Positions 9,135 through 45,259 of a stretch of 64,000 nucleotides of DNA are shown here, one piece after another. A model generated the notes under the pieces. That model was not told the origin of the DNA. It was given only the letters and a program-made list of their open reading frames with translations, and did no database searches. The stretch's first letter is position 1. The number at the start of each line of letters is the position of its first letter. The DNA lies in sequence record PP695294.1, one strand, 5' to 3'. Made by a program: the position numbers and the translations under genes.

Positions 9135-9146
9135 TTAGGCCTCGCT

Positions 9147-9187
9147 GGGAGGAGGAAATCCTCCTCCTGGCTACTCCTTTCTTTTTT
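9147..9187 (+). terminator. Probable intrinsic terminator/attenuator
   Basis: GGAGGAGG-AAAT-CCTCCTCC stem with a T tract shortly after. Confidence 0.6.
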
Positions 9188-9203
9188 GGCCGAGGAGGCT
9201 ATT

Positions 9204-10043: not shown

Positions 10044-10053
10044 GAATTAGCGA

Positions 10054-10941: not shown

Positions 10942-10944
10942 TTG

Positions 10945-11772: not shown

Positions 11773-11777
11773 GTGTA

Positions 11778-11802
11778 GGGGCTCTTCGGAGCCCCATCTT
11801 TT
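11778..11802 (+). terminator. Intrinsic terminator
   Basis: GGGGCTC-TTCG-GAGCCCC-ATCTTTT. Confidence 0.8.
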
Positions 11803-11819
11803 GGCGATGCGGAGTCCCT

Positions 11820-13232: not shown

Positions 13233-13243
13233 AGGTATCTTCC

Positions 13244-14242: not shown

Positions 14243-14251
14243 GGGGCAGTC

Positions 14252-15175: not shown

Positions 15176-15188
15176 TGGAGTAAATACC

Positions 15189-16685: not shown

Positions 16686-16697
16686 GAGGTAACGACA

Positions 16698-17687: not shown

Positions 17688-17689
17688 TC

Positions 17690-18589: not shown

Positions 18590-18600
18590 CAGGAGACTTC

Positions 18601-20043: not shown

Positions 20044-20053
20044 GGAGTAACAG

Positions 20054-21052: not shown

Positions 21053-21055
21053 AAC

Positions 21056-29091: not shown

Positions 29092-29146
29092 AAATAAATA
29101 AAAGGTACCTACCTCCCCGAAGGGAGGTAGGGCCTTTATTTTCTTT
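29092..29146. terminator. Bidirectional intrinsic terminator
   Basis: CCTACCTCCC-CGAA-GGGAGGTAGG flanked by A and T tracts, between convergent genes. Confidence 0.85.
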
Positions 29147-29148: not shown

Positions 29149-29820
29149 TTACATGCCGAGTGACTCGGACAATGTTTTTAATCCAGTGTAATCGCGCTTT
29201 TCAGCCAACTCACGGATTTGGCGTTTGTTATCTGCCATTGCTGAGTGCAACACTTGGTCACGTGCAACAATAGCGGCCAACAACGCTTTACATTGGTCTA
29301 CTGTAAACGGACTGTGCTTAGTATTCAGCGTATCGAGCCAGTATTCTGGTGCGGTATCCGCCTGAATATATTGACCGAGGATGGTACGCGACGATTCATC
29401 GGCTTGAAAGTGACTACCTTCAAACTCGATATAACCATGGCGCTCATCTTCGTAGCGGTGGTCGAGTTCCAACAGCATCTTCTGCACGTCTTCGTAAATG
29501 TAACGTGCGGTAGATTTCAGATTCCCGCGAATTTCGTCGAGGTCAATCTCCAGCACATTAGCAATAAACTCTTTCGTGCGTTTCAATGTGAAGTTAGCTT
29601 CAATCTCCGACATCTCATACAGCTTCATGCGTGCCAGGGCTTCTTTATCAGACATCCCTTCGATGAGATGGTAATGGAGTAATGCACAAAATCCGGTACG
29701 ACCCTGATCCTGCGCACCGATTCGTTCCATGAAATTACCGTGACGATCAATCGGCAAATCACGCTGGAAATAACGGGCGCGGATCTCTTCGTTCGTTAAG
29801 CTTTTGTCAGTAACAGACAT
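29149..29820 (-). CDS. DUF4376-like tail-fibre-associated protein
   Basis: C-terminal IEFEGSHFQADESSR..YWLDTLN..FTVDQCKALLAAI resembles DUF4376. Confidence 0.65.
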   Translation of the reverse strand: MSVTDKSLTNEEIRARYFQRDLPIDRHGNFMERIGAQDQGRTGFCALLHYHLIEGMSDKEALARMKLYEMSEIEANFTLKRTKEFIANVLEIDLDEIRGNLKSTARYIYEDVQKMLLELDHRYEDERHGYIEFEGSHFQADESSRTILGQYIQADTAPEYWLDTLNTKHSPFTVDQCKALLAAIVARDQVLHSAMADNKRQIRELAEKRDYTGLKTLSESLGM

Positions 29821-30362
29821 TCGTCCTCCTCAATCAGGCCAAGTTCTAACAACAAACCGAAGTCCAGCATCTGGAAGTCCTGATCGAGGTTACCGGCCCA
29901 CAACAGAGAAATGTTGTGTTGCTCTTCTTCTTCCAACTGCGGGAGCAGGTGTTCTTCGAAGATTTGACGCTCTGTGTAATAAGCGTCAACCGGGTTATTG
30001 GAGCGTAAGTTACGAATACGCATCCGCGGGAATGACAAGCCCAATGCCACTAAACTTTCAGGACTGGCTTCATCAATAGAGTGACGTAGCAGTTCGATTT
30101 TGTGGCGTGGGTATGCAAGCAGTCGCTTCTCAAAGCCAGGGTTGCGCTTTTCGATTTCCGCGACAGACTCGTGTCCTTTCTCAACGCAGTAGACCGGGAT
30201 CATCACATTCAGCCCGTATTTAATCAACAGGCTTTGGATTTCATCAGTGAAGTCTTCCCCTGCCACAATTGCGTGCACATTGTACAGCTTGCTTTTGCGC
30301 AGGAAGCGATCGACCAAGTGCAGTTTACGCTTCGTAAAATTGTGAATCAGTATTGACTTCAT
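29796..30362 (-). CDS. Hypothetical protein of the radical SAM module
   Basis: GGAG RBS before ATG 30362; overlaps both neighbours. Confidence 0.75.
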   Translation of the reverse strand: MKSILIHNFTKRKLHLVDRFLRKSKLYNVHAIVAGEDFTDEIQSLLIKYGLNVMIPVYCVEKGHESVAEIEKRNPGFEKRLLAYPRHKIELLRHSIDEASPESLVALGLSFPRMRIRNLRSNNPVDAYYTERQIFEEHLLPQLEEEEQHNISLLWAGNLDQDFQMLDFGLLLELGLIEEDECLLLTKA

Positions 30363-31653
30363 TCTGGGCTCCGTTTTGTAATTTTTCTGCTTCGGCACGT
30401 TGGCGTACACAACGTGAACAATAGCACATGGATTTATCATGCAAATCTGATGCGCGAGTCGTACCAGTTTTCTGATACCAATATTCCGCCGCCATCAGCT
30501 TCGCAGTAGTCCAACCACACTGACGACGCTCGGCGTGATACGCTTTACGGTCTTCCAGTGTACCTTCACCGTTTTCGTACGATGCTGCTGCGCAGCTACC
30601 GCAGCTGTGTTTCATCGGACACCCTAAACAGGTTTCTGGGTAGTTGGTGTACTGCGTTTGAATCTCTTCTAACAGCTTACCGCCGTCCAGGCTCACAAAC
30701 TCACGACCGACCAGTTCCGCTACAGCAGAGCGGGAAGTTACCGTGGACATGAAACGGTTACAACCGTAAATCTTGCGATCAAAGCCGAGACAGGTCATGT
30801 GCGTCAACGTACCGCAGTACGGTTTCAGGCGTTCTGGGTCGAGACGAACAGAGTCGTCGTGTAAGAGTTTGTCACGCCAATCCGGGTCCCAAGTTGCCAT
30901 AAAGTTCAGGCCATCCGGGATGATGTGTGTAATCGTGTTACGCGGGTTGGTGTGCAGACCCTTCTCAATCCAGTAGTCCATCACGTCCATCATCTGGTTC
31001 GCGATATCCAACGCCATATGGCGCGGCAGGATATCTTCGTACGTTACATTACCAGAAATGGTACCACCGCCGGACATGTCAATTAACGATTTCATGCTGG
31101 CGGCATAGTGCGGCAATGTATCGATCGTAAACGTCGCTTTTACGCCCAGTTCAGCGATGCCAACACTCTTCAGATAATTGTAACCGCGTACCGCAGCTTC
31201 GTACGACCCTTCACGCGTCGTGGTAAAGATACGATATTTGTCATGGACTTCAGGTAAACCATCGATGGAGACCCCAATAGACAGTTTGTCTTTCCAGCGC
31301 TCGATAATTTCTTTGTTCAGCGGACGGTCCAGAAGCGTACCGTTCGTGGAGATACTGAACATATACGGGCGATTGTGTTCTGCGCATAACTTCTCTGCGG
31401 TTTCAAAGGCCGCCAAAAGAAGTTTAGGCTGCATGAACGGCTCACCACCGATGATATCGATGATGACTTCAACGTTCGGGATATCTTTATCACGCTCGAA
31501 ACAAGCGTGGATAAAATCAATCACGTCTGCTACTTTGTTGTTACGCGGATATTTACGCTCGTAGCAGTATTCGCAGTCCAGGTTACATGACAAGTTAGTC
31601 ACAACCTGATATGTGCGTGGTGTGTACTGGATTTGCTGTTCGCTATTACTCAT
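30325..31653 (-). CDS. Radical SAM/SPASM-domain peptide maturase
   Basis: CNLDCEYC, GGEPF, STNG, SIDG; auxiliary C..DRKIYGC..CLGC-x5-C-x2-C..C plus CYCSRC. Confidence 0.92.
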   Translation of the reverse strand: MSNSEQQIQYTPRTYQVVTNLSCNLDCEYCYERKYPRNNKVADVIDFIHACFERDKDIPNVEVIIDIIGGEPFMQPKLLLAAFETAEKLCAEHNRPYMFSISTNGTLLDRPLNKEIIERWKDKLSIGVSIDGLPEVHDKYRIFTTTREGSYEAAVRGYNYLKSVGIAELGVKATFTIDTLPHYAASMKSLIDMSGGGTISGNVTYEDILPRHMALDIANQMMDVMDYWIEKGLHTNPRNTITHIIPDGLNFMATWDPDWRDKLLHDDSVRLDPERLKPYCGTLTHMTCLGFDRKIYGCNRFMSTVTSRSAVAELVGREFVSLDGGKLLEEIQTQYTNYPETCLGCPMKHSCGSCAAASYENGEGTLEDRKAYHAERRQCGWTTAKLMAAEYWYQKTGTTRASDLHDKSMCYCSRCVRQRAEAEKLQNGAQNEVNTDSQFYEA

Positions 31654-32560
31654 TGTTCGCCGCCCGTTTACGCTTAGCAGAAATTACACGGTTGATGTAG
31701 TTATACGCATCAACGCCGATAGAACGCGCCAGGCGATTACAGCCGACTTCCAATATCTCTGGGGCGTTCTGAATTTGCTCCTGCGTACCGTCGGCGTTAA
31801 GCCACAGCACTTCACTGCACGTGTTGCACTCGGTATCGAACATTTTACTGATCGCAAGCCCACATTCAGAATCGTTCTGCATGTTAAGGCGTTCGATATT
31901 GTCGAGTATTTTCCAATACCCGTACATGAAGTTCATGACGTGGTCTGGCGATAACGGTTTCGGCATCATCGCATCAAACAACAACGACACACCACCTGGA
32001 CGGTAATGATAGATTGCTCGGTGCAGCTCGATGAAATCTTCGTACCAGCGTTTATCGCCTAACTGGTCACGCGTCATCACACCCCAGGTGTAATAATTGT
32101 CCAGCTCGTACAGCACTTCCAGCGCTTCGTGATTACCACCGTTTACAAAGTTCATAAACGGACGTTCCGACTTCTTGTAGCCGTCAATGGACACAAAGAT
32201 AAGGTCGAACTGTTTCAGCAACGGCAGATGTGATTTACGCATCTTTAAACCGTTGGTGTACATGTGATGACGGAGGTTCGGATGAGACTCCTTCAACTCG
32301 TTCACGAAGTCTTCAATCTTACGCTGCGCTAACAGCGGCTCACCGCCCGTCCAATGAATCTCACCGATATCCGGATTCTTCTCTAAAATCGAGAGAATCT
32401 CTTCACGTTGAAACTCACGAGAAGTATCTTCTCTATCCATGTAATAAGCCCCTCCACAGAAGCTACAGTCTAAGTTACACTTAGAAGTTGCGACAACCGA
32501 CAGAATTGACGGTTTGTCGTACAGTTCAGACGAGATCCTGGATTCTACTTGATCTGTCAT
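31646..32560 (-). CDS. Second radical SAM enzyme (short, Twitch-like C-terminus)
   Basis: CNLDCSFC, GGEPLL, YTNG, SIDG; C-terminal CNTC..ADG..GC; GGAG RBS before ATG 32560. Confidence 0.88.
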   Translation of the reverse strand: MTDQVESRISSELYDKPSILSVVATSKCNLDCSFCGGAYYMDREDTSREFQREEILSILEKNPDIGEIHWTGGEPLLAQRKIEDFVNELKESHPNLRHHMYTNGLKMRKSHLPLLKQFDLIFVSIDGYKKSERPFMNFVNGGNHEALEVLYELDNYYTWGVMTRDQLGDKRWYEDFIELHRAIYHYRPGGVSLLFDAMMPKPLSPDHVMNFMYGYWKILDNIERLNMQNDSECGLAISKMFDTECNTCSEVLWLNADGTQEQIQNAPEILEVGCNRLARSIGVDAYNYINRVISAKRKRAANNE

Positions 32561-32582
32561 TGCAGGTTGCTCCAGTATATTT

Positions 32583-33470
32583 TTAAATATAATCAATGGC
32601 GAATAAAGGATCTTCGTCTACGTTAGCGCCAGGCACCAGTAACATCGGGTCGTGATAGGCAGCTAAAATTTTGTTCAGGTCGGCGTGTCTTTCGTTCAGA
32701 CGTTTCAAATCGGCCAACGTTACCGAACGACCACGAATCTCAGAAACAGCTTCTGCTTCTTCTTTCGTTAAATCCACCTTCGTTAAGAGGAAACTTACCA
32801 GCTTACTCAAATCCGCTTCTGTCGCCGGGTAATCCCCATATCGAGTTTGAACCAGGTGTTGCATCCACGGCTTACGAATACGTTTGGTGATTTCAAAATC
32901 GTCAGTCAGCGCATACCAGACAGAACGCTTTTTATCCCACACGAACTTATAGCTATACGCCATCATGTCCGCTAAACGGGTGATGCCGAGTTCTTTATAC
33001 CCCTCGATATCGATGTATGGTTCGGTGTCGAAATACGTTTCCGTATCGGCAGGTACCAGTACAAAGTAGTAAGGGAACGAGCCCAGATAGTCCGGACTCC
33101 ACCAACGGCGCGCCATCGGTTTTGCTTCAAGTTCGTCAAACGGTGTAAACATCAGTTCTAAATCGACGCTGTTGTTCAAAATCCCTTCACTGAAGAAATA
33201 CTTACCGTCGACTAACACGCCACGAGAGTTACCATCGCCGTTAAAGATAACGATGGCCTCTGCAACCATATCACGGATCTTAAACGTATTTTCTACGGTG
33301 TAGTTCTTCTTGTCGGTCAAGAAGCGACCACGAACCTTTGGCCACTCACCAGGAATCTGTGCAATCAGTCTGACTTTGTCAGCGAGATGTGCACGCACCG
33401 AATCTGGGGAAGATAGATGCAGCGGGTGGTTGAATGTGGTTTTATACGCAAGATGCAAATCGTTTTTCAT
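32583..33470 (-). CDS. Hypothetical protein of the radical SAM module
   Basis: 295 aa with GGAG RBS, between the Cys-rich peptides and the radical SAM genes. Confidence 0.8.
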   Translation of the reverse strand: MKNDLHLAYKTTFNHPLHLSSPDSVRAHLADKVRLIAQIPGEWPKVRGRFLTDKKNYTVENTFKIRDMVAEAIVIFNGDGNSRGVLVDGKYFFSEGILNNSVDLELMFTPFDELEAKPMARRWWSPDYLGSFPYYFVLVPADTETYFDTEPYIDIEGYKELGITRLADMMAYSYKFVWDKKRSVWYALTDDFEITKRIRKPWMQHLVQTRYGDYPATEADLSKLVSFLLTKVDLTKEEAEAVSEIRGRSVTLADLKRLNERHADLNKILAAYHDPMLLVPGANVDEDPLFAIDYI

Positions 33471-33492: not shown

Positions 33493-33699
33493 TTATCGAT
33501 TCCCCGCTCCACGGCTACAGCTTCCGCTGCAGGACCAGCTACACCCACCATTACAGTTATAGTGAGAAAGCGGTAAGCCAGCCAGGTTATTTGTGGTCGA
33601 CACGGTGCCCTGGTTAGCGATATAGTTGTTTGCCTGTGCGGTTGTAATGTAACCTTCTGCCGTAACGAGACGGTTTCGAATAGTCTTGAGACTGATCAC
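33493..33699 (-). CDS. Cys-rich precursor-like peptide 3 (4 Cys)
   Basis: GGAGG RBS; leader like peptides 1 and 2; core NCNGGCSWSCSGSCS. Confidence 0.8.
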   Translation of the reverse strand: MISLKTIRNRLVTAEGYITTAQANNYIANQGTVSTTNNLAGLPLSHYNCNGGCSWSCSGSCSRGAGNR

Positions 33700-33714
33700 A
33701 TAAGCCTCCGTCAG

Positions 33715-34119
33715 TTAGGAGTTAGGACCTGAACAACCACCAGAGCACGCACCTGAGCAGTTTGCGGAGCAGGATTTACCACAACCCCCAGAACAGCTGC
33801 CTGTGCACGTGCCGCTACAACCACCAGAGCACGAAGAGCTACAGCCCGTGCAGCTGCTGCTACAGCCTGATACACAGTTTGCCGAACAAGTCGACCCACA
33901 ACCACCTGTCGCAGACCCTGTGCAGCCGCCAGAGCAACTTGAGCAGCTAAAAGAACACGTACCACCACAGTCGTAGTGCGAACGACCTTGACCTGCGAAC
34001 AAGTCAGCGTTATTCGTAGCTTTATTGCGAATGTAGTTTTGCACATTCGTGGTATTCTTTAGAGCGTTTGCATCGATCGTGTTTAATCGGTTATTCAGTT
34101 CTTTTAATCCAATTGCCAT
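33715..34119 (-). CDS. CxxxC-repeat Cys/Ser/Gly precursor-like peptide 2 (20 Cys)
   Basis: About 50-aa leader, then DCGGTCSFSC and a run of CxxxC repeats. Confidence 0.9.
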   Translation of the reverse strand: MAIGLKELNNRLNTIDANALKNTTNVQNYIRNKATNNADLFAGQGRSHYDCGGTCSFSCSSCSGGCTGSATGGCGSTCSANCVSGCSSSCTGCSSSCSGGCSGTCTGSCSGGCGKSCSANCSGACSGGCSGPNS

Positions 34120-34129
34120 TTAATCCCCC

Positions 34130-34522
34130 TTAGCGACCTGAACAGCCGCCGGAGCAGGCCCCGGAACAACTGGAAGAACATGAGCCACCGCAACCACCTG
34201 TGCAGTTACCGGTACAGCTACTACTGCAACCACCAGAACAACCAGAGCAACCAGAACAGTTACCGCCACACGTCGAAGAACAGCTACCGATACAAGAAGC
34301 AGAACAGCTTCCTGAACAGCTCGAACAGCCATGCGAGCAACCGTTAGAGCACGTCCAAGAACACGTCCCGCCGCAATCTAGCTGTGTTTTCGTCCAACCC
34401 CCAAATCGGTCTGCCGCGTTATGGGCTTTAGAGGCCACTTGCGCGTCGATACGGGGGCCTGTCGCCATGTTAGCTTCGACTATCTGGACGCGGTTTCTGA
34501 CGTCTTTAATAGATATCGCCAT
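34130..34522 (-). CDS. CxxxC-repeat Cys/Ser/Gly precursor-like peptide 1 (21 Cys)
   Basis: AAGGA RBS; about 49-aa leader, then DCGGTCSWTC and CxxxC repeats. Confidence 0.9.
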   Translation of the reverse strand: MAISIKDVRNRVQIVEANMATGPRIDAQVASKAHNAADRFGGWTKTQLDCGGTCSWTCSNGCSHGCSSCSGSCSASCIGSCSSTCGGNCSGCSGCSGGCSSSCTGNCTGGCGGSCSSSCSGACSGGCSGR

Positions 34523-34543
34523 TACGCTTCCTTAAAAAGTAGA

Positions 34544-34580
34544 ACGAGCGGACTATGTCCATAAACATAGTCCGGCTCGT
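34544..34580 (-). terminator. 15-bp bulged hairpin: terminator, attenuator or processing site ahead of the Cys-rich genes
   Basis: ACGAGCGGACTATGT/ACATAGTCC(G)GCTCGT; on the minus strand followed by TCTACTTTTT. Confidence 0.55.
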
Positions 34581-34587: not shown

Positions 34588-35790
34588 TTACTTAGTACCC
34601 GCTTCAGCTTGAACATCGTCGCGCGAGGTGAGGTTGTTGTTAACGTGAACAGCAGCCTGCACAACACCGCCATACTGTTTATGGAGGTAATTCGGGTGTG
34701 GGTTATCCGCAGCCGCATGGTTCGCCAGATTCTGGTTTGCCTGCGAAATTGCGTTGGTGTTGTTTACAACCTGAGTTTTAAGACTGTTGATTTGTCCTTG
34801 CAGGTTATCAATTTGCTGTTGGAAGTCTTTGCCCTGATTCTCAAGATCCGTGACACGCTGATTTGTTTCATTCAGCGCAGACTGAAGATCGTTAACCTTC
34901 TTCTGTAATTGCAACACCAGAGAATTAAGGTTAGCTAATGCTAACGACATTTTCTGGTAATTTTGAGCAACTACATTAAGCTGGTCGTTCCACGCGGCTA
35001 ACGAAGCCACAACTGCATCGATGCGTTGCCCCAACGCCGTGTCTGCTGCTCTTAAGTCGCCGATATCTTTGATAGTGGCGTCAATGGCAGTCTGTACACT
35101 TTGAATCAGGGCACGAATCTCCGTCTCCGTCAGGCCATTAACCTGATGAATGTCGAGATTGTGTACGTTACCTTCGGCGTTGATGTGTGTATTTAAGGCG
35201 TCGAGGAAGTCGTTTCTCAGACCGTCCAGAATACCTTTAATTTCTTCCAGCTGTACTGCAGAGCCGGAGTTAATCGCATCTTTAATCCCCGCGAGTACGG
35301 TAATGATATACTCAAAACCGTAGATATCGCCAAGGTCTTTATACGTCGGGGCGGACGGGAACGTATCGGGTACGTTTCGAAGATCCTTGAAGTCCACCAC
35401 ACGGTCTTCAATTTTCAGCGACGCAATCGCTTGTCGGATGCCTTCGACGTTCGCGGACTGAAAACCACCAACGACTTGCGCAGAGACTTCGATATCAGTA
35501 GGAATGGCCGAGTTAGTTACCACCACACCCATGACCACTTCGCGGTTCTTGGTCATTTTCTGATATGCAGTATGTGCAAAAATCAGTTCGTAGTCTGTGC
35601 CGCGTTTGTACGGGTAGACACCTGGTTTATTCGCAGCTGCCAAGCGGAAGGTATCCGCGTAGAAAGCTCCGTCAGGAAAAGCAAAAGCCCGGTTAACTTT
35701 ACCAGAACCTAACGTAATACGCCGTGTAACGGCGTTCGACGTTAATGTCCCGGTAAGGTCGAGCGGGTACTGATGAATGATTTCGGCCAT
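34588..35790 (-). CDS. phiKZ gp131-like tail-fibre protein with long coiled coil
   Basis: YPLDLTG..FY..GTDY N-domain; heptads; C-terminal H...NPHPNY motif; AGGAG RBS before ATG 35790. Confidence 0.75.
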   Translation of the reverse strand: MAEIIHQYPLDLTGTLTSNAVTRRITLGSGKVNRAFAFPDGAFYADTFRLAAANKPGVYPYKRGTDYELIFAHTAYQKMTKNREVVMGVVVTNSAIPTDIEVSAQVVGGFQSANVEGIRQAIASLKIEDRVVDFKDLRNVPDTFPSAPTYKDLGDIYGFEYIITVLAGIKDAINSGSAVQLEEIKGILDGLRNDFLDALNTHINAEGNVHNLDIHQVNGLTETEIRALIQSVQTAIDATIKDIGDLRAADTALGQRIDAVVASLAAWNDQLNVVAQNYQKMSLALANLNSLVLQLQKKVNDLQSALNETNQRVTDLENQGKDFQQQIDNLQGQINSLKTQVVNNTNAISQANQNLANHAAADNPHPNYLHKQYGGVVQAAVHVNNNLTSRDDVQAEAGTK

Positions 35791-35837
35791 TGCCAAACTC
35801 CTTTGATTGGGGCTTCCTTGCCCCATAGCGCTATCTG

Positions 35838-38800
35838 TTAGGTACGGAACATAAGATTGACCTGGATAATATCAGGCTGTTGACGTCCTCTCTCGTTCAC
35901 CCAATCGTGCGCAATCGTTAACGTAAGATCATCGCCATCCCACGCCACGATCGGTGGTGGGAATAAACCCTGAGCGCCCGTGGTAACAACCGGGATTGCA
36001 CCTGTCACATTCGTAAACGTGTAGCTACGACTGTTCAGAACAACTGGTGTGCCGTTGGTCTCTCCCGGCTGTGGTAAGATTTGAATCTTACTATCCGAAA
36101 GATCGGTGGCGATTGGTAGACCCCCAGCGTCCGTGAAAAGCCAAGAGCAAATATGCTGGTTAGCTGTTTCGAGCGCTGAAGAACTTACCGCCGCGACAAA
36201 TGTAAAGGTGCACGGCACGCCTGCTGGCAGAGAGTGCTGTTTGTGGTGCACGGTATGTGGTGACGGCAATAACACTTCTGGATTTTCGTCAATGTTAACA
36301 TCCGTACCTTCCGCCTCGACGTTGTAGAAAAAGCCATCCACCGCCTCCCATGGGGCAACGTGGACATTAAAGGTCGTTTCTACTCCCGGTGTACCTGGGA
36401 CGATGAATTTACTTTGCACCACCACCATCAAGTTCGTTGAGGTCGGAGAGAAAGCGGGCGTTGGAATACCTACCCACTCCATTCCCAACGATGTCGCTTC
36501 ACTGTTCTCGTCGGCCGTTACCGTCGCAATTGTTGTAGGATGTTTCCAAAACGCCCCCGACTTGTTTGCCTGAGTAAACGCCGGCAAAGTTTTCAAGCCT
36601 TCGAAACGTTTGGACACCATCGCTTTACCGCGACGCTGTGCGTCAGATACGGTATAAAGCAACTGACTATCCAGATAGCCTTTCGTAGCATCGACTGACA
36701 AAGGACCCATCGCTTCTTTACGCAATGGTGCCAGTCTGCCCGTTGCTGCATCCCTTCCCACTTCCACATCATGCTTATTCTCAACCGCCGCGTGTTCCAA
36801 CAGCTGTTTTACCGCCCCCAATCGCTTAGCATGGTCGACGTTAGTCTCGACGACTCGCGACGAGCCCGTTTTAACATACCCGATGTAGAGTTCCGTTTCA
36901 GTGTCTGGATGTTGAACCACGTCCATTACGTACTTCGGTGTACCATTTTCTACCTTAGCGTGCAGGTAGAATGTCCGGTTCTGATGGTTTGTTGGAAACG
37001 CTGCGCTGAGGTCAATATACCACGTAGGCAGCTTATAAGTGCTCGAGCCGAAACGCAGGTTAACTTCCTCAGTCACATATACCAGCCAACCTTCGGCTGT
37101 TTCCACACCGGCGATAACAACAGTCTCAGTCGCCCCACCGAAACTCGGACGTGCAACAAAATCACTCGACGACATTGCGATACCACCACAATAGACGTAG
37201 TCGAGAGATGAGTTGTGTAGCATCACCTGATCACGATGAGCCAGATAAGCTGGACTGACTGGAGTGTGTGTCGGTGCCATACGTCCAACGCCGTGTGGTG
37301 CAGAAGAACGCGTCCAGGTACCATTAGACAGCGTAAGACCGACACCGTAGTTAAGCGCACCCAAGTCGCCAATTTGGCGCAAGGTTAACGTGTGTGGAAG
37401 ATACAACCCGAACTGCGTACCATCTACCGACACCATGGTAGGTTGTCCCGGCCGGCGTGTTTTTCCTCCCGTTATCTCTCCCAACGTAGCATAGTTCAAG
37501 CCGTAGTCGAGGTTGTTATAGAAGTCAAACAGTGCCAATATCGCTGCGGGGAATGTTACCTGCCCGTTGCTGATTGTTGGTTTCAGTGTAAAGTAGTAGA
37601 TATCTAACAAGTTAACATTGTTCACAGTACGTGTACATGCCACTTGTGCTAATGTGAGCGGTGTGGCCGTTCCGATGCCGATGAACCAAACGGAAAACAA
37701 TGCCTTTCCTGCGTTATTTGCAGCAAGGATAAATTCCGAAGCATAACCATTCGCAGCGCCTGCCGGTGCTCCGTCGATGATCATCTGCTTCATCTTATCC
37801 CATTCAGCTTGTGACAGCGTCAATCGATCGGCGTGAATCGTGAAAGTGCCGGAAACGTTGTGGTAAGGGAATGTTTCTGGTCCTGTGCAATACCAGCCGT
37901 TTAACTCTGTACCAGGCGACGCCGGTGTAACAATGTGGCACATCTGCGACAGATTCTCATACGTGATAGAATCTACTACACGACGATTGTTAGTTGGGCC
38001 ATACCCCGCCTTACCTGAGTAAGTGGTGTTCGGATCAAACTCAACTTCAATTGCCAAGCGGGAACGCGGCTGTGACAACCAGATAAGTCTGGAATTCGCT
38101 CCCAGAGTCAGCGGATACGCCATGCCCAACTCGTAGATAGAACCACGACCTTGGTTTAACATTACCGCACTAAAACTTCTGGCAGTAAAGTTGTAGTCAC
38201 ACGACAGGTACTCGTACCAACTCACACCGTCATCTAACGTTGTAATCGTGACATAAGGCATTAGGTCGCGATCGCCCGCATGTCCTTGCGAAACGATATA
38301 CTTGTCTTGCGATGTTGCAAAGGTTCGGTTATTAGCTTGACCTTCGCCCCACTTCCGGCTCGGAATCCCAATCTCAGCGCCGCCGTTATAACGGACCGTG
38401 GTAAGATCGGCCACGATAGGGAATCGATCGGCACCTTCCAGCGTTACCGTCATTGAACTGCAATCAACAACAAAGCTTGACACCCATTGTTTAAAGTTAA
38501 TAGTTTGCCCTGTAGTAGAAGCAAACCAGACTGTTGGCGTTAAACCAACACGAAAGTTCAGCCCATCCACAGCAATCGCGTGATTACATTCCGGACCATG
38601 GACGAAATTTCGCGCACTATTCCACTTCGCCGATGCGTCTGCGTAGATCTGTGTTACTGGCGCTACCAACACATCTGTATCAGAACGTTTCTGACCCTGA
38701 CGCAAGTAGATATTATCTCCCGACGTTAACATCCCACCTGTTAACACATCCGCCACAAACGTGTTGCTACCACCCAGATTAAGTTCGTTGAGTGCGATGC

Positions 38801-41021
38801 TACGCATACTCACGAAATAGTCACCGGAGGTAAGGACAGTACGGAGCAGATAAACCCGATCGTTGCAAACGATCAAATCGTTTGTTGATGGATCGGCAAC
38901 CCATGGTGCGGTTGTAATCACACCGGCCGCGTTACCATTTCGGTAATCGCCCAAGTAAACTTTAACAACACGATGATGTTTTGCATGGTCAATGGTGCCG
39001 TCAAAGATGACCAGATAATACGCATAGTCACTGCCTAAGCAGATCATTGCATCTGTACCGGTAATCAGAATAGCAACCAGATTCACCCCAGGATACGCCG
39101 ACATTCCAGCGGGGTGATAACGTACGGACGTCTGCTGCATATTTTCCAGCGTATTGCTTGGCGACACATCAGCATAGGCGTAGTAGATAGCCCAGTCACC
39201 TGGCGGGTTCCCGTTGGAACCATTGCGCAACGAGTAAACCTTACCAGCCTCGTAACGCGCCAGTCCTTTTTGCCAGGTTTGGTTTTTGGTGTACCCTTCG
39301 TAGTTCCCCTGGACAGGTATAGGCAAGAAGTTATTGTTGCCGTACGATGATCCGCCAACGGTCCATGCTGGCAACAACGTAGCAATCTTGTCGTTCAGTG
39401 TACCGATCTTCTGTTCGAGCAAGAAACCCTGGCGGGCAGTAACCATCTTATCTGTTGTGGTGTCAATAGCATCCCACAGTTTAGCCAAACCTGTAACAGA
39501 CGTGGATGCGTACGGCACGTCATCGAGATCAGCAATGGTGTGGGTGTGTGTTGAGAGTGCCTTGCCTGATAGCACGGTGCGCAACGCATTAGTAACCGGT
39601 TTCTCCAGCGGCCCGGTATTGTTCATCTTCTCAATACCGAAATCCGACGCGGTTAAGGTTAAATGCATTTGACCGTTTTCGTCTAACACAAACCCTTTAC
39701 CATTGACCGTATACGTGTCGTCCACATATCCGTCGAGTTTGTTCTTCAAGTCAGTAACAGCTTTTTGGGAAATCGCTGTGGACGCCGCAGCGGACGCCGA
39801 AAGGTTAGTAATCGCAAACAAACCCTGCACAGTTGTGGTTGCTGCAGGCAGCTCCGCATTCATGTAAACTTTGTTTGTTTCTTTACCAGAGCCGTAAATC
39901 TTCAACGTGTCGCTGGACTTGAAGTAGGCGTTTGCTGGAAGTATCTTCACCGAGGTCAAGTACATCTTAACCATATCCGGTGTAACGAGATACACGCTGT
40001 TATACACAGGTGCAAGCACACCTGCATCATAAGCGCCCCACTTGTCACCCGCTTTACCCGAGTGAACCCAAAGCGTGTTCAGACCAGCACTGAACTCCGT
40101 AGCGATACCCGGTTCGTTGTTATCCTGGTCAGCTTTTAATACCAGCGGTTTTGTCGAGGTGATAATGAACTTATCACCTTTCATGCTGATAACGTGACCA
40201 GACGTTGTTTGGAACGTAATCGCGTCGTTATTCAGAACACGCATACGGCCCAGTAAATCACCCAGGGTATTATCCAGAAGCATGTCAACGTGTTTCTGTT
40301 GGGTGCCACTGGTAGACATTAACGTCACTAGCTCTGCCAGGGTACGTCCGAATGCCTTAGTCGCATCTACAGCTTTGCCGAGTACCGGGAGAGCGCCAAT
40401 GTCACCGCAGGTGTAACCATGTGCATTTTTAATCAGGTGGTGTTGATACATTTCGTCATCAAACACCTGCTTACCGTTCTGATAAATCAAATCGGTAACT
40501 TCGGCAAATGCCTCATCCAGTTCGTGGGCGCGCTCTAAAATACCCAGACGGATATCTTCCAACGCCTTTACGATTTCATCGCGAAGAATCGCTTCTTCGA
40601 GATCTTTTGGCGGGTCGATTGGCGAGATAATCGGCGGATATTTCATCAGCTCAGACCAATCGCAGTTGCGCGGGTCTTTCATATCCGTCTTAACCAGATA
40701 CTTGCCGATTTCAGAAGCAGGGATGCGATACTGTCGACCAACCGACAACAACTCGTATTCTACCTCTGTGGCGTTCAGCAGCATTATGCTGCCGTATATT
40801 GCATCGTTCTCAGCCTCGGCTAATTCCTGGAAGTAATGTCCTAAGAAATAATCAAGACCTTCTATTAACTTGCGTTTGGTTCCGGTTGTTTTATCGGTAA
40901 CGGTTAACGTTAACCCGATGCGATAGAACGGTGCTTCGACGGGAATGACCGTCGAATAACGGTTCGGGTAAGTAGCGGTACTGAGGGTACCGTTAAACTG
41001 CGCCGCATCTTCTCTCGGCAT
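35838..41021 (-). CDS. Large gp131-like tail-fibre/virion protein (1727 aa)
   Basis: APFY..L.EGLDY N-domain; fibre motifs ATTTVQG, HTHTIADL; AGGAG RBS before ATG 41021. Confidence 0.8.
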   Translation of the reverse strand: MPREDAAQFNGTLSTATYPNRYSTVIPVEAPFYRIGLTLTVTDKTTGTKRKLIEGLDYFLGHYFQELAEAENDAIYGSIMLLNATEVEYELLSVGRQYRIPASEIGKYLVKTDMKDPRNCDWSELMKYPPIISPIDPPKDLEEAILRDEIVKALEDIRLGILERAHELDEAFAEVTDLIYQNGKQVFDDEMYQHHLIKNAHGYTCGDIGALPVLGKAVDATKAFGRTLAELVTLMSTSGTQQKHVDMLLDNTLGDLLGRMRVLNNDAITFQTTSGHVISMKGDKFIITSTKPLVLKADQDNNEPGIATEFSAGLNTLWVHSGKAGDKWGAYDAGVLAPVYNSVYLVTPDMVKMYLTSVKILPANAYFKSSDTLKIYGSGKETNKVYMNAELPAATTTVQGLFAITNLSASAAASTAISQKAVTDLKNKLDGYVDDTYTVNGKGFVLDENGQMHLTLTASDFGIEKMNNTGPLEKPVTNALRTVLSGKALSTHTHTIADLDDVPYASTSVTGLAKLWDAIDTTTDKMVTARQGFLLEQKIGTLNDKIATLLPAWTVGGSSYGNNNFLPIPVQGNYEGYTKNQTWQKGLARYEAGKVYSLRNGSNGNPPGDWAIYYAYADVSPSNTLENMQQTSVRYHPAGMSAYPGVNLVAILITGTDAMICLGSDYAYYLVIFDGTIDHAKHHRVVKVYLGDYRNGNAAGVITTAPWVADPSTNDLIVCNDRVYLLRTVLTSGDYFVSMRSIALNELNLGGSNTFVADVLTGGMLTSGDNIYLRQGQKRSDTDVLVAPVTQIYADASAKWNSARNFVHGPECNHAIAVDGLNFRVGLTPTVWFASTTGQTINFKQWVSSFVVDCSSMTVTLEGADRFPIVADLTTVRYNGGAEIGIPSRKWGEGQANNRTFATSQDKYIVSQGHAGDRDLMPYVTITTLDDGVSWYEYLSCDYNFTARSFSAVMLNQGRGSIYELGMAYPLTLGANSRLIWLSQPRSRLAIEVEFDPNTTYSGKAGYGPTNNRRVVDSITYENLSQMCHIVTPASPGTELNGWYCTGPETFPYHNVSGTFTIHADRLTLSQAEWDKMKQMIIDGAPAGAANGYASEFILAANNAGKALFSVWFIGIGTATPLTLAQVACTRTVNNVNLLDIYYFTLKPTISNGQVTFPAAILALFDFYNNLDYGLNYATLGEITGGKTRRPGQPTMVSVDGTQFGLYLPHTLTLRQIGDLGALNYGVGLTLSNGTWTRSSAPHGVGRMAPTHTPVSPAYLAHRDQVMLHNSSLDYVYCGGIAMSSSDFVARPSFGGATETVVIAGVETAEGWLVYVTEEVNLRFGSSTYKLPTWYIDLSAAFPTNHQNRTFYLHAKVENGTPKYVMDVVQHPDTETELYIGYVKTGSSRVVETNVDHAKRLGAVKQLLEHAAVENKHDVEVGRDAATGRLAPLRKEAMGPLSVDATKGYLDSQLLYTVSDAQRRGKAMVSKRFEGLKTLPAFTQANKSGAFWKHPTTIATVTADENSEATSLGMEWVGIPTPAFSPTSTNLMVVVQSKFIVPGTPGVETTFNVHVAPWEAVDGFFYNVEAEGTDVNIDENPEVLLPSPHTVHHKQHSLPAGVPCTFTFVAAVSSSALETANQHICSWLFTDAGGLPIATDLSDSKIQILPQPGETNGTPVVLNSRSYTFTNVTGAIPVVTTGAQGLFPPPIVAWDGDDLTLTIAHDWVNERGRQQPDIIQVNLMFRT

Positions 41022-41040
41022 TGCAAACACTCCTAATCTG

Positions 41041-41081
41041 TAATAAAACGGAGACCGCCCTCCCAATAACGGAAGGGCGGT
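41041..41081 (-). terminator. Probable intrinsic terminator
   Basis: Minus strand ACCGCCCTTCC-loop-GGGAGGGCGGT followed by CTCCGTTTTATT. Confidence 0.55.
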
Positions 41082-41116
41082 TTACCTACGGACTACCCGC
41101 CCGTAGGCAGTCCGTC

Positions 41117-44100
41117 CTAAGAGGCCCACTCACCCGAGTTGTTGCCTTCGTTTCTACGTTCAGTATCCAACGTTTGTAAAATCCAATCCCATGTCCTGGT
41201 GGGGATGTGGAATGGATTACGCTTCTCAATGAGAATCGTCTCGCCACCAGTGCGAAGTTCCACCGGTGTCGTTTCAGTAATCACGAACATCGGATTACCG
41301 CTACTGCCCACAACATTAATAGTGAACTTCGCTTGCAGCGGCGGCACAGAACCTTCCGGAGGCACGAACACGATGTGAATTGGCTGCATCGGTTTCGTGC
41401 GGGCAAGAGTCCCAGATATCTGAACAGCTGTTGTCGATGCACTGAAAGGTATAACATTACCCGGAATTTTCTCACTACCCACGATGATATATCCAGGGTA
41501 GTTAGAGAGCATTGTCCCATTTACCGACACAAAACGCTCAGTTTGAGTCGGGCGATAAGCCCGCATAAAGCCGTACTTCCATTCACCACCGTTAGACGTA
41601 TAGTCTGCAGAAGCCGACTCAAGTAGCGGAGCACCACGTTTCTGCAGCCCTTTGTAAAACGGTGCGGGGAGTTTACCGTTCGGTGCAAGTTCCGGATAAC
41701 CCTCACTTGCAGCAGACATCGTGATGTATTCCGTAACCGGGTTATCGACGTTATCTCCAAAGTTCGCGAACGCGACGGTTGATATCGACATCTCCTCATG
41801 CCCAGAAGACTGGCTGTCTGGAGAACGCTCAATATACGACTCAAATAGTGAGCGTAGATAATGGAAACGATTTAAATCTACTTCTGTTGTGGAGGGGTCC
41901 ATCAAACCGTGGTTGATTGTGACGCCTTCACCAGTTTCGATGCCAGTAACACTAATCGATAAAGCGCCACCTTTAAAATAATCAATCGCGTCAAACGGAA
42001 CGTCGTATTCTATCTCACGAACAGTTGCCGAAGCCTGGCCACCTATCTTACTAATCGTCGATATTCGCAGTATCTGCGTATCAACAATATAGCGATAACG
42101 AATAAGCCAGCGCGAACCAATGGCTGCGAACTCGCTAGCGATTGAAACCGGGAGATAGTCTAAACAGTCAGGCGACTGAACATCCACGCTCTTGATTACA
42201 CGAGGAGCATCAACCAGCGTATTAGTAACGCTGGATTGTGTGCTGGCAATTCTTCCGGTTGGTTTATCGTACGGCGCGGCAATAAAGCCACAATTTAAAC
42301 TGGTCTTGGAGTTACTCCACCGCAGGACTCTGGTTTTACCTTTCTCATCAGCAGAAGGGGCCATGAAGTTTAATGAAACTTCGACGTCCGAGGTTTTTGG
42401 GACTTCAGGATAATCAGTGTCGATTACCACCGAACCCTCGAATGTCGCCATTCCGTTTTCTTTCGGGTTGCTTGGTGTAAACCAGCAATACGGGGACGCG
42501 TTTTCAGTGGAAACAACCGCCGCAAGAAGAATCCTGAGCGAGGTGGCACTTACGAATTTGTAATCAAATAACCCACGATCTAAACGAACGAGGTTATCCC
42601 CAGAAACAGACGGGTTAGTTGGATACGCATACAGCCATTGTTTAGGTAATGGATCAACCTTATTCAACGGCAGCATTTTCGGGTTATCCGTCAACGACCA
42701 GTCGGTGTTACTCACCCCGTGTGCTAGACGTGTTTCGAAGTGCCGTTTAAGTTCGGACGCCATGCCAAAATCAAACGTCGTTTCAAACTCGTAAGTCGTG
42801 CCTGCAACCAATCCCGCGTCAGGGACATCAATGTGGCCGATATACCCACGTTCCAGGTTAATACCTTCCGTGTCCACAATAGGTTCGGCGCGCGAATATA
42901 ACGCATCGGTTATCATGTTTACGTAAAGGTAATGCCTTAAACCGTTCGGAGTCTTAACAAACTCCTGAAGGCGAGCAACCTTGGTGTTTTTATCAGAGGC
43001 CCCAACCGCAAAGTCACCGTCGTAAATTGTGAAACGAATTGCGGCTGCTTTAGCGCTATCGTTACACTCGGCACGGAATGCTAAGCAGTGTTGCTTCCAC
43101 CCCTCCTTGACCTTCGCCTCCAGATACCCCGCTTCTGTAATACCCGCACCGATAATTTCACCGTCCAGATAAACAGAAACAGCACCACCGCCACGAACCC
43201 AAATCCGCAGCTTACCAGAGTCGCAACGAACCCACGTTTTCGCCAAGAGGTTAACGACCGACAAATCACCCATTCCGGTTGTCGTTAAACCAATCTGCGC
43301 ACCGTAGTTCGTTTCCGGGACGGCAACCTCAAACCCACTAAAATCAATACCGGCACCGGTATTGATTACCGCGTTCTGCCACGTTCTTTCCATACGGTTA
43401 TCTGGAGAGAACCACTGGAACATCGGCGTGGTTTGCAGGTCTATCGAACCAGATACCGTCCCCTCTTTACGTGCACCATTTAACAGATAGAAATAATTCA
43501 AATCCGTTACGGCGAGTGTGGTACGTGTAGATCCCACAGTCCAAGTCTTGCCGCGCACAGCGGCAAAATCGGTCACGGAGTCCTCTTTCGCGTTTGCTAG
43601 CGCAGCTGCAACTACGTCTAAACGTTTTGACAAATCGTTCAGAACGTTTGGGGTAACGCCGCGATTATCCGACAAGCCATTTAGGTTGGTAGAATATCGA
43701 GCGATACCGGGCACTGTTTGAGAAGCCGTTGGGATCTGTAAATCGGCGAAGTTGTGATGGTGGCCTTTATCACTAAGACCAGTAACTGCTTCTGCCAACG
43801 AATCGGAAAGTGGTTTATCGACGTCAGCTGTGTTATCAGCCAAGTCCAGACCCAAATCCTTTTTCGTTAGCGTTCGGCTACCAGTGTCCATCGGCTGGTT
43901 ATTCAGCAGTGTTGTCTTCCTGACGTACGAAGACAGATCACCCTCGTACGGTAAGAGCGAAGCTGGGGTGGCTGCTTGTCCTTTGACTACATCGCTCGGC
44001 TTATCAGTTAGCGTCACAACGCCGGGTTCAGAGGTCGTCGCGGGTTTGGCTGTGACCTTCCCGGTGACGGGATCGGCTTTTGACCCTTTACCCGTGAAAG

Positions 44101-45247: not shown

Positions 45248-45259
45248 TCAAAAATCTCC

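What the first reader, a model, noticed from the sequence alone, without database searches (positions are those of the whole stretch)
33493..34522. Three precursors share a leader and an aromatic first ring but have graded cores (21, 20 and 4 Cys)
Seen: all three have M-x-[IS]-x-K-x3-NR[LV] starts and enter the core via [DN]C-x-G-x-C-S-[WF]-[ST]-C. The cores use almost only C, S, G, T, A and N, mostly in a CxxxC register with occasional CxxC. In peptide 2 one expected Cys is Ala, yet the register is kept (C-TGS-A-TGG-C). Inference: the conserved leader is an enzyme-recognition sequence. The conserved W/F-x-C could be a separate site, e.g. a three-residue cyclophane as made by triceptide-type SPASM enzymes, which would explain two rSAMs. 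The 4-Cys peptide may be a cap or regulator. A metallothionein-like metal or Fe-S carrier role is an alternative.
Basis: partly seen in the sequence, partly recalled or inferred. Interest (0 to 1): 0.72.

Follow-up and report, generated by a model that had tools for sequence, protein, structure and literature searches.

The report
Radical-SAM-modified cysteine-repeat phage fibre proteins
Three small, unannotated cysteine-repeat genes in the tail-fibre operon of an SPN3US-type giant Salmonella phage are stand-alone copies of a module that other phages carry at the C-terminal end of tail fibres, always beside radical-SAM enzymes, so phages probably weld part of their fibres chemically rather than make a secreted antibiotic.

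Summary
Three minus-strand genes lie at the stated coordinates: A (130 aa, 21 Cys), B (134 aa, 20 Cys) and C (68 aa, 4 Cys). They share an N-terminal region and a C-x-G-x-C-S-[WF]-x-C entry into a C-[ST]-G-x repeat. All three are real genes under purifying selection, kept in the same order in at least six genera of SPN3US-like jumbo phages. The SPN3US reference records omit them and annotate a wrong-frame ORF (gp166) instead.

The repeats are almost certainly substrates of the two adjacent radical-SAM enzymes.
- gp163 is a SPASM enzyme. Its best family matches are the CXXX-repeat maturase, then PapB; CteB is the closest solved structure.
- The "leader" is not a typical RiPP leader. It is a short helix with a trimerisation-type motif, followed by a motif found in tail fibres (NAxxLxGxxxxxY).
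- In other phages and prophages (lambda-like, P2/Mu-like, T4-like, temperate) the same junction plus CXXX array forms the C-terminus of 200-570-aa tail-fibre proteins. These sit next to the same cassette: small rSAM, gp165-like protein, SPASM rSAM.
- No protease or exporter is present in the operon.

Best reading: a cytoplasmically cross-linked (probably thioether) fibre-type module. The chemistry and presence in the virion are untested. I found no support for a triceptide or metallothionein reading.

The parts
34130..34522 (-). Gene A: 130-aa protein with a 49-aa N-terminal helix/junction region and a 21-Cys C-[ST]-G-x array. Not annotated in the SPN3US records.
   Evidence: ORF, SD, Cys positions; phrog_6085, E 9e-41. 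TIGR04114, 19.6 bits against a cut-off of 20; orthologues and purifying selection. AF2 gives a helix at residues 5-21; the array is not modelled.
33715..34119 (-). Gene B: 134-aa paralogue with 20 Cys, Phe in place of Trp in the first ring, and one Cys position occupied by Ala.
   Evidence: phrog_6085, E 3e-41; the Cys-to-Ala position is shared with Huxley, Asesino and P0002/P0003/P0005.
33493..33699 (-). Gene C: 68-aa paralogue with a GTG start. It has the full N-terminal region but only the first ring plus one more repeat (4 Cys).
   Evidence: phrog_6085, E 3e-24; orthologues have 2-4 Cys and always keep C-x-G-x-C-S-W.
33711..34046 (-). Wrong-frame ORF annotated as gp166 in SPN3US. It overlaps gene B and is probably not a gene.
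   Evidence: annotated at the matching coordinates; selection acts on the A/B/C frames.
32583..33470 (-). gp165-like 295-aa accessory protein of the cassette, with a fold that has no known relative.
   Evidence: phrog_8030; homologues in L022, L025, L026, L027 and L111 cassettes. AF2 pLDDT 91.5; no PDB match (best E 0.59); in BFVD only its own orthologue.
31646..32596 (-). gp164-like small radical-SAM enzyme. CX3CX2C lies at residues 40-47 of the 316-aa ORF, with four C-terminal Cys. The true start is probably the ATG 12 codons in.
   Evidence: Radical_SAM, 1e-15; motifs; homologues in every CSW-type cassette.
30325..31653 (-). gp163-like radical-SAM/SPASM maturase (442 aa). CX3CX2C lies at 23-30 and the SPASM-type Cys at 280-379, including C342-x2-C345-x5-C351-x2-C354.
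   Evidence: TIGR04115 125.6 bits, PapB 113.6 bits; closest solved structure is CteB (5wgg); all these Cys are invariant in 17 homologues.
29796..30440 (-). gp162-like protein (phrog_7988), function unknown. A homologue is present in the L025 cassette only.
29149..29820 (-). gp161-like DUF4376 protein, the last gene of the transcription unit. It has weak tail-protein PHROG matches.
29108..29131 (.). Bidirectional terminator-like hairpin (10 bp, 7 G-C) closing the minus-strand unit after gp161.
34533..34580 (-). Strong hairpin followed by a U-rich tract, 8 nt after the gp167 stop and just upstream of gene A's SD. Possibly an attenuator or terminator.
   Evidence: MFE -25.7 kcal/mol, z -2.5. Sequence.
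34588..35826 (-). gp167: 412-aa coiled-coil virion structural protein directly upstream. It is not listed among the head proteins.
   Evidence: SPN3US virion mass spectrometry, PMC5694885 Suppl. Table 1.

Best explanation
A, B and C are stand-alone, miniaturised versions of a C-terminal tail-fibre module. The module is a short trimerising helix, then the fibre junction motif NAxxLxGxxxxxY-x-C-x-G-x-C-S-W-x-C, then a C-[ST]-G-x cysteine array.

Proposed mechanism:
1. They are made late from the tail-fibre operon.
2. In the reducing cytoplasm they are modified by a dedicated three-protein maturation set. gp163 is a SPASM radical-SAM enzyme of the CteB/PapB/CXXX-maturase lineage. gp164 is a second small radical-SAM enzyme. 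gp165 is an accessory protein with a new fold.
3. gp163 most likely converts the cysteine array into a ladder of thioether (S-C) cross-links.
4. gp164 may act on the invariant C-x-G-x-C-S-W ring.
5. The product stays attached to its N-terminal part (nothing is cleaved or exported). It serves as a covalently stapled rod or knob associated with the fibre/baseplate apparatus, possibly docking on gp167 or gp168-170. This would give covalent stability that disulfides cannot give to a protein folded in the cytoplasm.

Shown: gene reality, conservation, enzyme family, cassette composition, fusion of the module to tail fibres in other phages, and tail-module location.

Inferred: the chemistry, the division of labour between the two enzymes, trimerisation, and presence in the virion.
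For: 1. Location. The window is an SPN3US-type phage. The genes lie between virion proteins gp167-170 (baseplate/fibre candidates; PMC5694885) and a terminator after gp161.

2. Profile search. A profile of the junction finds 77 cluster representatives. In these the first Cys of the junction lies anywhere from residue 37 to 415, and the array always runs to the C-terminus.

3. Direct fusion to a tail fibre. In P0225 (429 aa), residues 1-123 match tail-protein phrog_1640 (3.7e-31) and residues 308-398 match phrog_6085, the family of A/B/C.

4. The junction motif is a fibre repeat. Large hits carry 4-17 copies of the pre-junction motif alone. P0197 (569 aa, seven copies) is a tail fibre (phrog_5668, 3e-29).

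5. Every context examined for the CSW-type module or gp163's closer homologues is a phage tail module:
- Deferribacter prophage: J-like protein ... 302-aa fibre with CXXX end, gp165-like, two rSAMs (L022).
- T4-like 213-kb contig: gp13-like, 568-aa CXXX fibre, two rSAMs (L023).
- L025: three S74-type fibres plus an A/B/C-like trio.
- Temperate phage L026 and lambda-like prophage L027.
- P2/Mu-like L111.

6. Canonical system. A cassette that passes TIGR04115 (389 bits, above the 350 cut-off) sits between a collagen-type tail fibre and the holin of a Firmicute prophage (L010). L038 has a Phage_fiber_rpt protein just upstream.

7. Enzyme. gp163 has CX3CX2C plus the SPASM cysteines. Its best models are the CXXX maturase, then PapB. 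Its closest solved structure is the thioether-forming CteB.

8. No peptidase or transporter is annotated in the operon.

9. Fixed count. A always has 21 Cys although core length varies from 75 to 80 aa. This fits a structural ruler.

10. N-terminal helix. AF2 gives pLDDT about 81. An R-h-x-x-h-E-like motif is present: strict in 8 of 18 orthologous leaders, loose in 18 of 18 (motif as described in PMC6173795).
Against: - No direct evidence that A/B/C are in the virion. The SPN3US proteomics could not see them because they are absent from the annotation. gp161-166 were not detected.
- A/B/C are small (68-134 aa) and have a leader/core look typical of RiPP precursors.
- Distant CXXX systems in Firmicute genomes have 61-94-aa peptides; L041 (the one scanned) has an ABC transporter and an FtsX-type permease beside them, as in classical RiPP clusters (L035, L037, L041, L042).
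- gp163 scores far below the TIGR04115 and PapB cut-offs.
- The cores lack Asp/Glu, the acceptors used by PapB and QhpD, so the cross-link type is a guess.
- AF2 gives no structure for the array.
- The fibre junction motif is absent from gp167-170, so no docking partner is identified.
- One context (L029) has CXXX proteins but no rSAM within 7 kb.
Confidence: 0.55

Rival explanations
1. Classical phage-encoded RiPP. The about 49-aa leader guides the rSAM enzymes and is then removed by a host or unlinked protease. Thioether-rich peptides are released at lysis as an antimicrobial, a signal or an anti-competitor factor.
For: Small precursor-like size with three graded paralogues. SPASM maturase related to ranthipeptide/sactipeptide enzymes. 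Distant CXXX-repeat clusters in Firmicutes have small peptides; L041 (the one scanned) carries an ABC exporter. The Gly-rich L-x-G-G stretch 8-9 residues before the core superficially recalls double-glycine leaders.
Against: No protease or exporter in the operon. The same junction plus core is the C-terminus of 200-570-aa tail-fibre proteins in other phages. The 'GG' stretch is a motif repeated up to 17 times inside large proteins such as the tail fibre P0197, so it is not a cleavage site. The location is always in tail modules. The Cys count in A is fixed at 21.
Confidence: 0.2
2. Modified but non-structural assembly factor. The cross-linked proteins act inside the cell as templates, chaperones or clamps for assembling the giant fibres gp168-170 and gp167, and are not kept in the virion.
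For: The genes sit in the fibre operon next to a DUF4376 protein, with a tail-assembly chaperone nearby. In fibres such as P0197 the C-terminal position after the NAxxLxG repeats is held by a C-terminal domain that matches the ends of tail-fibre PHROGs; I read it by eye as an S74-type intramolecular chaperone, which is removed after folding. There are three small paralogues and three giant paralogues (PMC5694885).
Against: In fused versions the array is the C-terminal end of the fibre itself, and no cleavage motif is evident. Nothing shows removal.
Confidence: 0.13
3. Metal or Fe-S binding protein (metallothionein-like). The cysteine array binds metal or clusters, for example along a fibre axis or as a donor for the rSAM enzymes, and is not itself cross-linked.
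For: 25% Cys across the family's cores. From general knowledge, phage fibres are known to bind metal ions along their axis.
Against: No match to any metallothionein or metal-binding family. The array is constantly linked to SPASM peptide-maturase-type enzymes and a dedicated accessory protein in unrelated phages. The C-[ST]-G-x register with Ser/Thr at +1 (67%) and an invariant Trp is unlike metallothionein C-x-C/C-C patterns.
Confidence: 0.07

Closest known systems
CXXX-repeat radical-SAM target system (NCBIfam TIGR04114 target / TIGR04115 maturase; Pfam PF27846)
   Same: Cys every fourth residue with small residues between, next to a SPASM radical-SAM enzyme. TIGR04115 is gp163's best family match. 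A canonical member (L010) also lies at a prophage tail-fibre/lysis junction.
   Different: gp163 scores 125.6 bits against a cut-off of 350. The phage cassette has a second small rSAM and a gp165-like protein, where L010 has 102-aa and 192-aa partners. The targets have the NAxxLxG...C-x-G-x-C-S-W junction, which P0011-type targets lack. I found no experimental work on the family in the searchable literature.
Ranthipeptide and SCIFF maturases PapB (freyrasin) and CteB
   Same: SPASM radical-SAM enzymes that join Cys sulfur to a carbon of a nearby residue in repeated short motifs. PapB is gp163's second-best family (113.6 bits, aligned over residues 22-357). CteB (5wgg) is the closest solved structure.
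   Different: Both scores are below family cut-offs. From general knowledge PapB uses C-x3-D/E, but the cores here have no Asp or Glu. The substrates are 68-570-aa proteins linked to phage fibres, not about 45-aa exported peptides.
Phage tail fibres with NAxxLxGxxxxxY repeats and a tail-fibre-type C-terminal end domain (e.g. P0197)
   Same: Same pre-junction motif, and the variable module sits at the C-terminal end.
   Different: The C-terminal module here is a cysteine array with dedicated rSAM enzymes, not a self-cleaving chaperone. A/B/C lack the long shaft.
Covalently cross-linked virion proteins such as the HK97 capsid chainmail (general knowledge)
   Same: Covalent bonds that stabilise a virion part assembled in the cytoplasm.
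   Different: HK97 cross-links are autocatalytic isopeptide bonds in the capsid. Here separate radical-SAM enzymes would act on a fibre-type module, and this is unproven.

Membership tests
NCBIfam TIGR04115 (rSAM maturase, CXXX-repeat target family) | Whole-protein score at or above the curated cut-off (350 bits) | tested here: not met
   gp163 scores 125.6 bits; this is its best family, E 3e-36. The L010 prophage enzyme scores 389 bits and passes.
NCBIfam TIGR04115 (rSAM maturase, CXXX-repeat target family) | CX3CX2C radical-SAM motif plus SPASM auxiliary-cluster cysteines | tested here: met
   C23/C27/C30 and C280, C298, C342, C345, C351, C354 and C379 are invariant in 17 homologues.
NCBIfam TIGR04114 / Pfam PF27846 (CXXX-repeat target) | Repeat-model score at or above the cut-off (20 bits) | tested here: not met
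   A 19.6 bits, B 17.1 bits, C no hit. A is borderline. Relatives P0005-P0007, P0011, P0012 and P0015 carry precomputed PF27846 hits.
NCBIfam TIGR04114 / Pfam PF27846 (CXXX-repeat target) | Tandem C-x-x-x units of small residues adjacent to the maturase gene | tested here: met
   across the family 604 spacings of 4 against 101 of 3. The maturase lies 1.8-3.2 kb downstream on the same strand.
PHROG phrog_6085 | Significant match over the profile | tested here: met
   A 9e-41, B 3e-41, C 3e-24. The same family matches the C-terminal ends of fibre-fused proteins.
RiPP (ribosomally synthesised, post-translationally modified peptide) | Precursor with a recognition (leader) part and a modified core, next to the modifying enzyme | tested here: inconclusive
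   The organisation fits. In homologues, however, the 'leader' is replaced by whole tail-fibre proteins.
RiPP (ribosomally synthesised, post-translationally modified peptide) | Leader removal and export (protease and/or transporter in the cluster) | tested here: not met
   No peptidase or transporter domain in the operon's proteins, and none annotated in the flanking SPN3US genes.
RiPP (ribosomally synthesised, post-translationally modified peptide) | Demonstrated post-translational modification of the core | not testable with these tools
   Needs mass spectrometry.
Ranthipeptide (PapB-type) | Enzyme passes NF047865 (340 bits); Cys-x3-Asp/Glu acceptor motifs in the core | tested here: not met
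   113.6 bits. There is no Asp or Glu after the first Cys in A, B or C, and only 1.7% D+E across the family's cores.
Triceptide / three-residue cyclophane enzymes (XyeB, YhhB, GrrM/OscB, FxsB, AmcB) | Enzyme passes one of the family models | tested here: not met
   gp164: YhhB 35.9 bits (cut-off 445), AmcB 29.9 (425), FxsB 28.6 (370), matching the rSAM core only. gp163: YhhB 59 bits, GrrM 54 bits.
Triceptide / three-residue cyclophane enzymes (XyeB, YhhB, GrrM/OscB, FxsB, AmcB) | Aromatic-x-x motif that is actually cross-linked | not testable with these tools
   W/F/Y-[ST]-C is conserved, but that says nothing about chemistry.
Metallothionein-like metal binder | Match to a metallothionein family, or demonstrated metal binding | tested here: not met
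   No Pfam family for A, B or C. Metal binding cannot be tested here.
Phage tail fibre / virion protein | Homology to the module of proven tail-fibre proteins | tested here: met
   The junction plus array is fused to a tail-fibre N-terminal domain in P0225 and lies at the ends of fibre-like proteins in L022 and L023.
Phage tail fibre / virion protein | Detected in purified virions | not tested
   The published SPN3US virion proteome used an annotation that lacks A/B/C.

The most novel reading that the evidence does not exclude
Diverse tailed phages use a dedicated pair of radical-SAM enzymes plus a new-fold accessory protein to weld a ladder of thioether bonds into a cysteine-repeat tip of their tail fibres inside the reducing host cytoplasm. 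That would be a RiPP-type chemistry recruited to build a virion part. In SPN3US-like jumbo phages the tip has become three separate chains (A, B, C) that trimerise through their N-terminal helices, with a fixed 21-cysteine ruler in chain A.
Probability: 0.35. Interest if true: 0.9.

Novelty: new variant of a known kind. Interest (0 to 1): 0.78.

Why it matters
If correct, this would be the first case I know of where radical-SAM peptide-maturase chemistry builds a structural or adsorption part of a virus rather than a secreted natural product.

- It would explain how phages obtain covalent cross-links in proteins folded in a reducing cytoplasm.
- It would give a function to the radical-SAM genes of SPN3US-like phages, which the literature has described as enhancing host metabolism (PMC6614189).
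- It adds three conserved, previously unannotated genes to a model jumbo phage.
- It links the uncharacterised CXXX-repeat rSAM family to phage tail modules.
- It offers tractable substrates (68 aa, one or two rings) for working out the chemistry.

Tried and rejected
- Literature. Searches for SPN3US + radical SAM, "CXXX repeat", TIGR04115, jumbo phage + SPASM + cysteine-rich, and tail fiber + radical SAM + thioether found nothing on this system.
- Pfam gives nothing for A, B, C or gp165. PF27846 is not in the local Pfam copy.
- gp165 fold. The AF2 model is confident, but Foldseek finds no PDB relative, and in BFVD only its own orthologue. No RRE-like or chaperone assignment is possible.
- AF2 of A with a 34-sequence alignment models only the N-terminal helix. 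No multimer prediction was available.
- A profile of the family against PDB sequences gives no relative.
- tblastn of a fibre-fused member (P0192) against cultured phages found no match.
A degenerate DNA pattern was used instead. It returned mostly SPN3US-like contigs plus L111 and L135.
- Double-glycine leader cleavage was rejected because the motif is a repeated fibre motif.
- The fibre junction motif is not in gp167-170.
- Sigma-70 promoter scan: 4 sites against 7.4 expected, so uninformative.
- The genome-contig scan used a generic rSAM pattern. Only about the top dozen loci were true relatives, and these split into exporter-linked small-peptide clusters and prophage-type clusters.
Full report
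**What is there**

The window is 100% identical over the tested 7 kb to Salmonella phage 1252 and 98.4% identical to the model jumbo phage SPN3US. At the stated coordinates there are three consecutive minus-strand ORFs:
- A, 34522..34130, 130 aa, 21 Cys.
- B, 34119..33715, 134 aa, 20 Cys.
- C, 33699..33493, 68 aa, 4 Cys, GTG start.

Each has a Shine-Dalgarno-like sequence. All three share an N-terminal region of 48-50 residues and enter the cysteine array through [DN]-C-x-G-x-C-S-[WF]-[ST]-C. Cys spacing is 4 with a few 3s. B has one Ala where a Cys is expected.

**Are they genes?**

The SPN3US GenBank and RefSeq records do not annotate A, B or C. Instead they carry a 111-aa ORF in another frame over gene B, called gp166. 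Several lines of evidence show that A, B and C are the real genes.
- The same three genes, in the same order, are present in Erwinia phages Huxley, Asesino, Kwan and Phobos and in Cronobacter phage CR5. That is five further genera. They are also in many IMG/VR jumbo-phage contigs.
- Against these orthologues, synonymous sites are saturated (pS 0.72-0.94) while non-synonymous change is limited (pN 0.16-0.42).
- In 18 of 19 (A) and 18 of 20 (B) all-Cys columns both Cys codons are used.
- All three match phrog_6085, with E from 1e-24 to 1e-41.

A and B are the two most Cys-rich of 344 ORFs in the window.

**The neighbourhood**

Downstream on the same strand lie:
- gp165 (295 aa, no family).
- gp164, a small radical-SAM protein with CX3CX2C and four C-terminal Cys.
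- gp163, a 442-aa radical-SAM/SPASM protein.
- gp162.
- gp161 (DUF4376).

A terminator-like hairpin closes the unit at 29108-29131.

Upstream lie gp167, a coiled-coil virion protein, and the giant proteins gp168-170. Published SPN3US mass spectrometry places gp167-173 in the virion and calls gp168-170 baseplate/fibre candidates. gp161-166 were not detected, and A/B/C could not be detected because they were not in the database (PMC5694885).

A strong hairpin with a U-tract separates gp167 from gene A. No protease or transporter is present in the unit.

**The enzymes**

gp163's best NCBIfam match is TIGR04115, the maturase of the "CXXX-repeat target" family (125.6 bits, cut-off 350). The next is PapB (113.6 bits, aligned end to end). 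A and B just miss the repeat model TIGR04114, at 19.6 and 17.1 bits against a cut-off of 20. The closest solved structure is the thioether-forming SCIFF maturase CteB.

gp164 matches only the generic radical-SAM core. Its scores against the cyclophane (triceptide) enzyme models are 29-36 bits against cut-offs of 370-445. So there is no evidence for the triceptide idea.

gp165 gives a confident AF2 model (pLDDT 91.5). It has no structural relative in the PDB, and in BFVD only its own orthologue.

**What the "leader" is**

AF2 models only residues 5-21 of A, as a helix. At the same position all 18 orthologous leaders carry an R-h-x-x-h-E-like motif: strict in 8, loose in 18. This motif is known as a trimerisation motif of short coiled coils (PMC6173795).

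The second half of the leader ends in NAxxLxGxxxxxY just before the first Cys. A 58-position profile of this region, searched against 1.84 billion representative proteins, found 77 hits of two kinds.
- Proteins of 60-559 aa in which the junction is followed by a CXXX array that runs to the C-terminus. The first Cys lies anywhere from residue 37 to 415.
- Large proteins of 371-3100 aa that contain 4-17 copies of the pre-junction motif alone. P0197 is one; its C-terminal part matches the ends of tail-fibre PHROG families (tail-fibre PHROGs, 3e-29).

P0225 joins a tail-protein N-terminal domain (phrog_1640, 3.7e-31) to a phrog_6085 C-terminus. The junction C-x-x-G-C-S-W-T-C is nearly invariant across 34 aligned members.

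**Contexts elsewhere**

Distant homologues of gp163 (33-47% identity) and the fused targets all lie in phage tail modules.
- Deferribacter abyssi prophage: a J-like protein, then three genes downstream a 302-aa fibre-like protein with HxH/YYT repeats ending in the junction and 29 Cys, then a gp165-like protein and two rSAMs (L022).
- A 213-kb T4-like contig: a gp13-like protein, a 568-aa fibre-like protein with the junction and 30 Cys, and two rSAMs (L023).
- L025: three S74-type fibres plus a trio like A/B/C, whose third member keeps only C-x-x-C-S-W.
- Temperate phage L026 and lambda-like prophage L027.
- P2/Mu-like contig L111, where the cassette precedes what by gene order and size look like sheath, tube and tape-measure genes (unscanned).

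In all of these the cassette is: target, gp164-like rSAM, gp165-like protein, gp163-like SPASM rSAM.

A canonical TIGR04115 enzyme (389 bits) sits in a Firmicute prophage between a collagen-type tail fibre and the holin. It has a 226-aa CXXX protein and two small partners, but no gp164/gp165 homologues and no CSW junction (L010). Related loci show a Phage_fiber_rpt protein just upstream, or an M15 peptidase downstream.

By contrast, more distant CXXX clusters in Firmicute genomes have 61-94-aa peptides, and three of the four have a 710-728-aa fused rSAM (L037's is 397 aa); L041 (the one scanned) also has an ABC transporter and an FtsX-type permease. They look like ordinary RiPP clusters. The CXXX chemistry is therefore used in two settings, and the one in this window belongs to the phage-fibre setting.

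**Mechanism proposed**

Across the family the array is C-[ST]-G-[GTS]: Ser/Thr is 67% at +1 and Gly 50% at +2. Only 1.7% of core residues are Asp or Glu, and there are none in A, B or C. So the PapB/QhpD type of Cys-Asp/Glu link is excluded. The acceptor would have to be a Ser, Thr, Gly or Asn carbon.

I propose that gp163 installs a ladder of S-C thioether links along the array. gp164 would then act on the invariant first ring. This part is inference. It rests only on the observation that the CSW junction and gp164/gp165 homologues occur together and are absent together. gp165 would be an adaptor.

The product stays joined to its helix and is associated with the fibre/baseplate, giving covalent stability that disulfides cannot provide in the cytoplasm. 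The exact conservation of 21 Cys in A, while core length varies from 75 to 80 residues, holds even in the distant L025. It fits a structural ruler but is unexplained.

**Rivals**

A released RiPP (0.20), a non-virion assembly factor (0.13) and a metal binder (0.07) are not excluded. The decisive data are mass spectrometry of virions and of co-expressed substrates.

**Novelty**

The CXXX-repeat/rSAM pairing is a known, computationally defined family. I found no experimental study of it, and no mention of these genes in SPN3US-type phages. The only published comment on the rSAM genes calls them metabolic. The four-part cassette, the CSW junction and the link to tail fibres make this a new variant of a known kind. 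If the fibre reading is proven, it could have much larger significance.

Noticed in passing
window 33711-34046 (-): The gene annotated as gp166 in both SPN3US records is a wrong-frame ORF over gene B. The three real genes are missing from those records, and several Erwinia phage records annotate opposite-strand or wrong-frame ORFs here.
   Followed up: yes
window 34533-34580 (-): A 16-bp hairpin plus U-rich tract lies 8 nt after the gp167 stop and immediately before gene A's ribosome-binding site. It may be an attenuator that sets the A/B/C-to-gp167 ratio.
   Followed up: partly
window 32560-32596 (-): The gp164 ORF opens with TTG. An ATG 12 codons downstream is a more likely start. SPN3US annotates a still shorter 264-aa product, which would cut into the region just before the CX3CX2C motif.
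   Followed up: no
window 32583-33470 (-): gp165 folds confidently (pLDDT 91.5) into an alpha/beta domain plus a helical bundle with no relative in PDB or BFVD apart from its orthologue. It appears to be a new fold tied to this cassette.
   Followed up: yes
L129:5600-6650: A 107-kb IMG/VR contig has an extra gp164-like radical-SAM gene inserted between genes A and B, in addition to the usual copy.
   Followed up: partly
L014:8001-10272 and L015: A 177-kb human-gut phage contig with in-frame TAG codons (likely TAG recoding) carries a protein with an N-terminal Cys-rich part, a 102-aa partner and a 430-aa radical-SAM enzyme.
   Followed up: partly
L031:3868-5871, L032:5384-7399, L033:5647-7647: Genomes of Margulisiibacteriota / Termititenax encode proteins of about 660-670 aa with 112-122 cysteines in CXXX-type arrays next to a related radical-SAM enzyme. 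Their context was not examined.
   Followed up: no
window 35838-48973 (-) versus 33493-34522 (-): There are three giant paralogous fibre/baseplate proteins (gp168-170) and three small Cys-repeat paralogues. L025 likewise has three S74-type fibres and three small paralogues. This may be coincidence or a one-to-one pairing.
   Followed up: no
window 6503-21958 (+): A long run of paralogous genes of about 280-500 aa, matching in size the SPN3US head 'paralog family B' proteins listed in the published proteome.
   Followed up: no
P0183 (210 aa), P0187 (187 aa): Metagenomic proteins in which a C-type or truncated A-type product continues into an unrelated C-terminal domain. They may be real fusions or assembly chimeras.
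   Followed up: no
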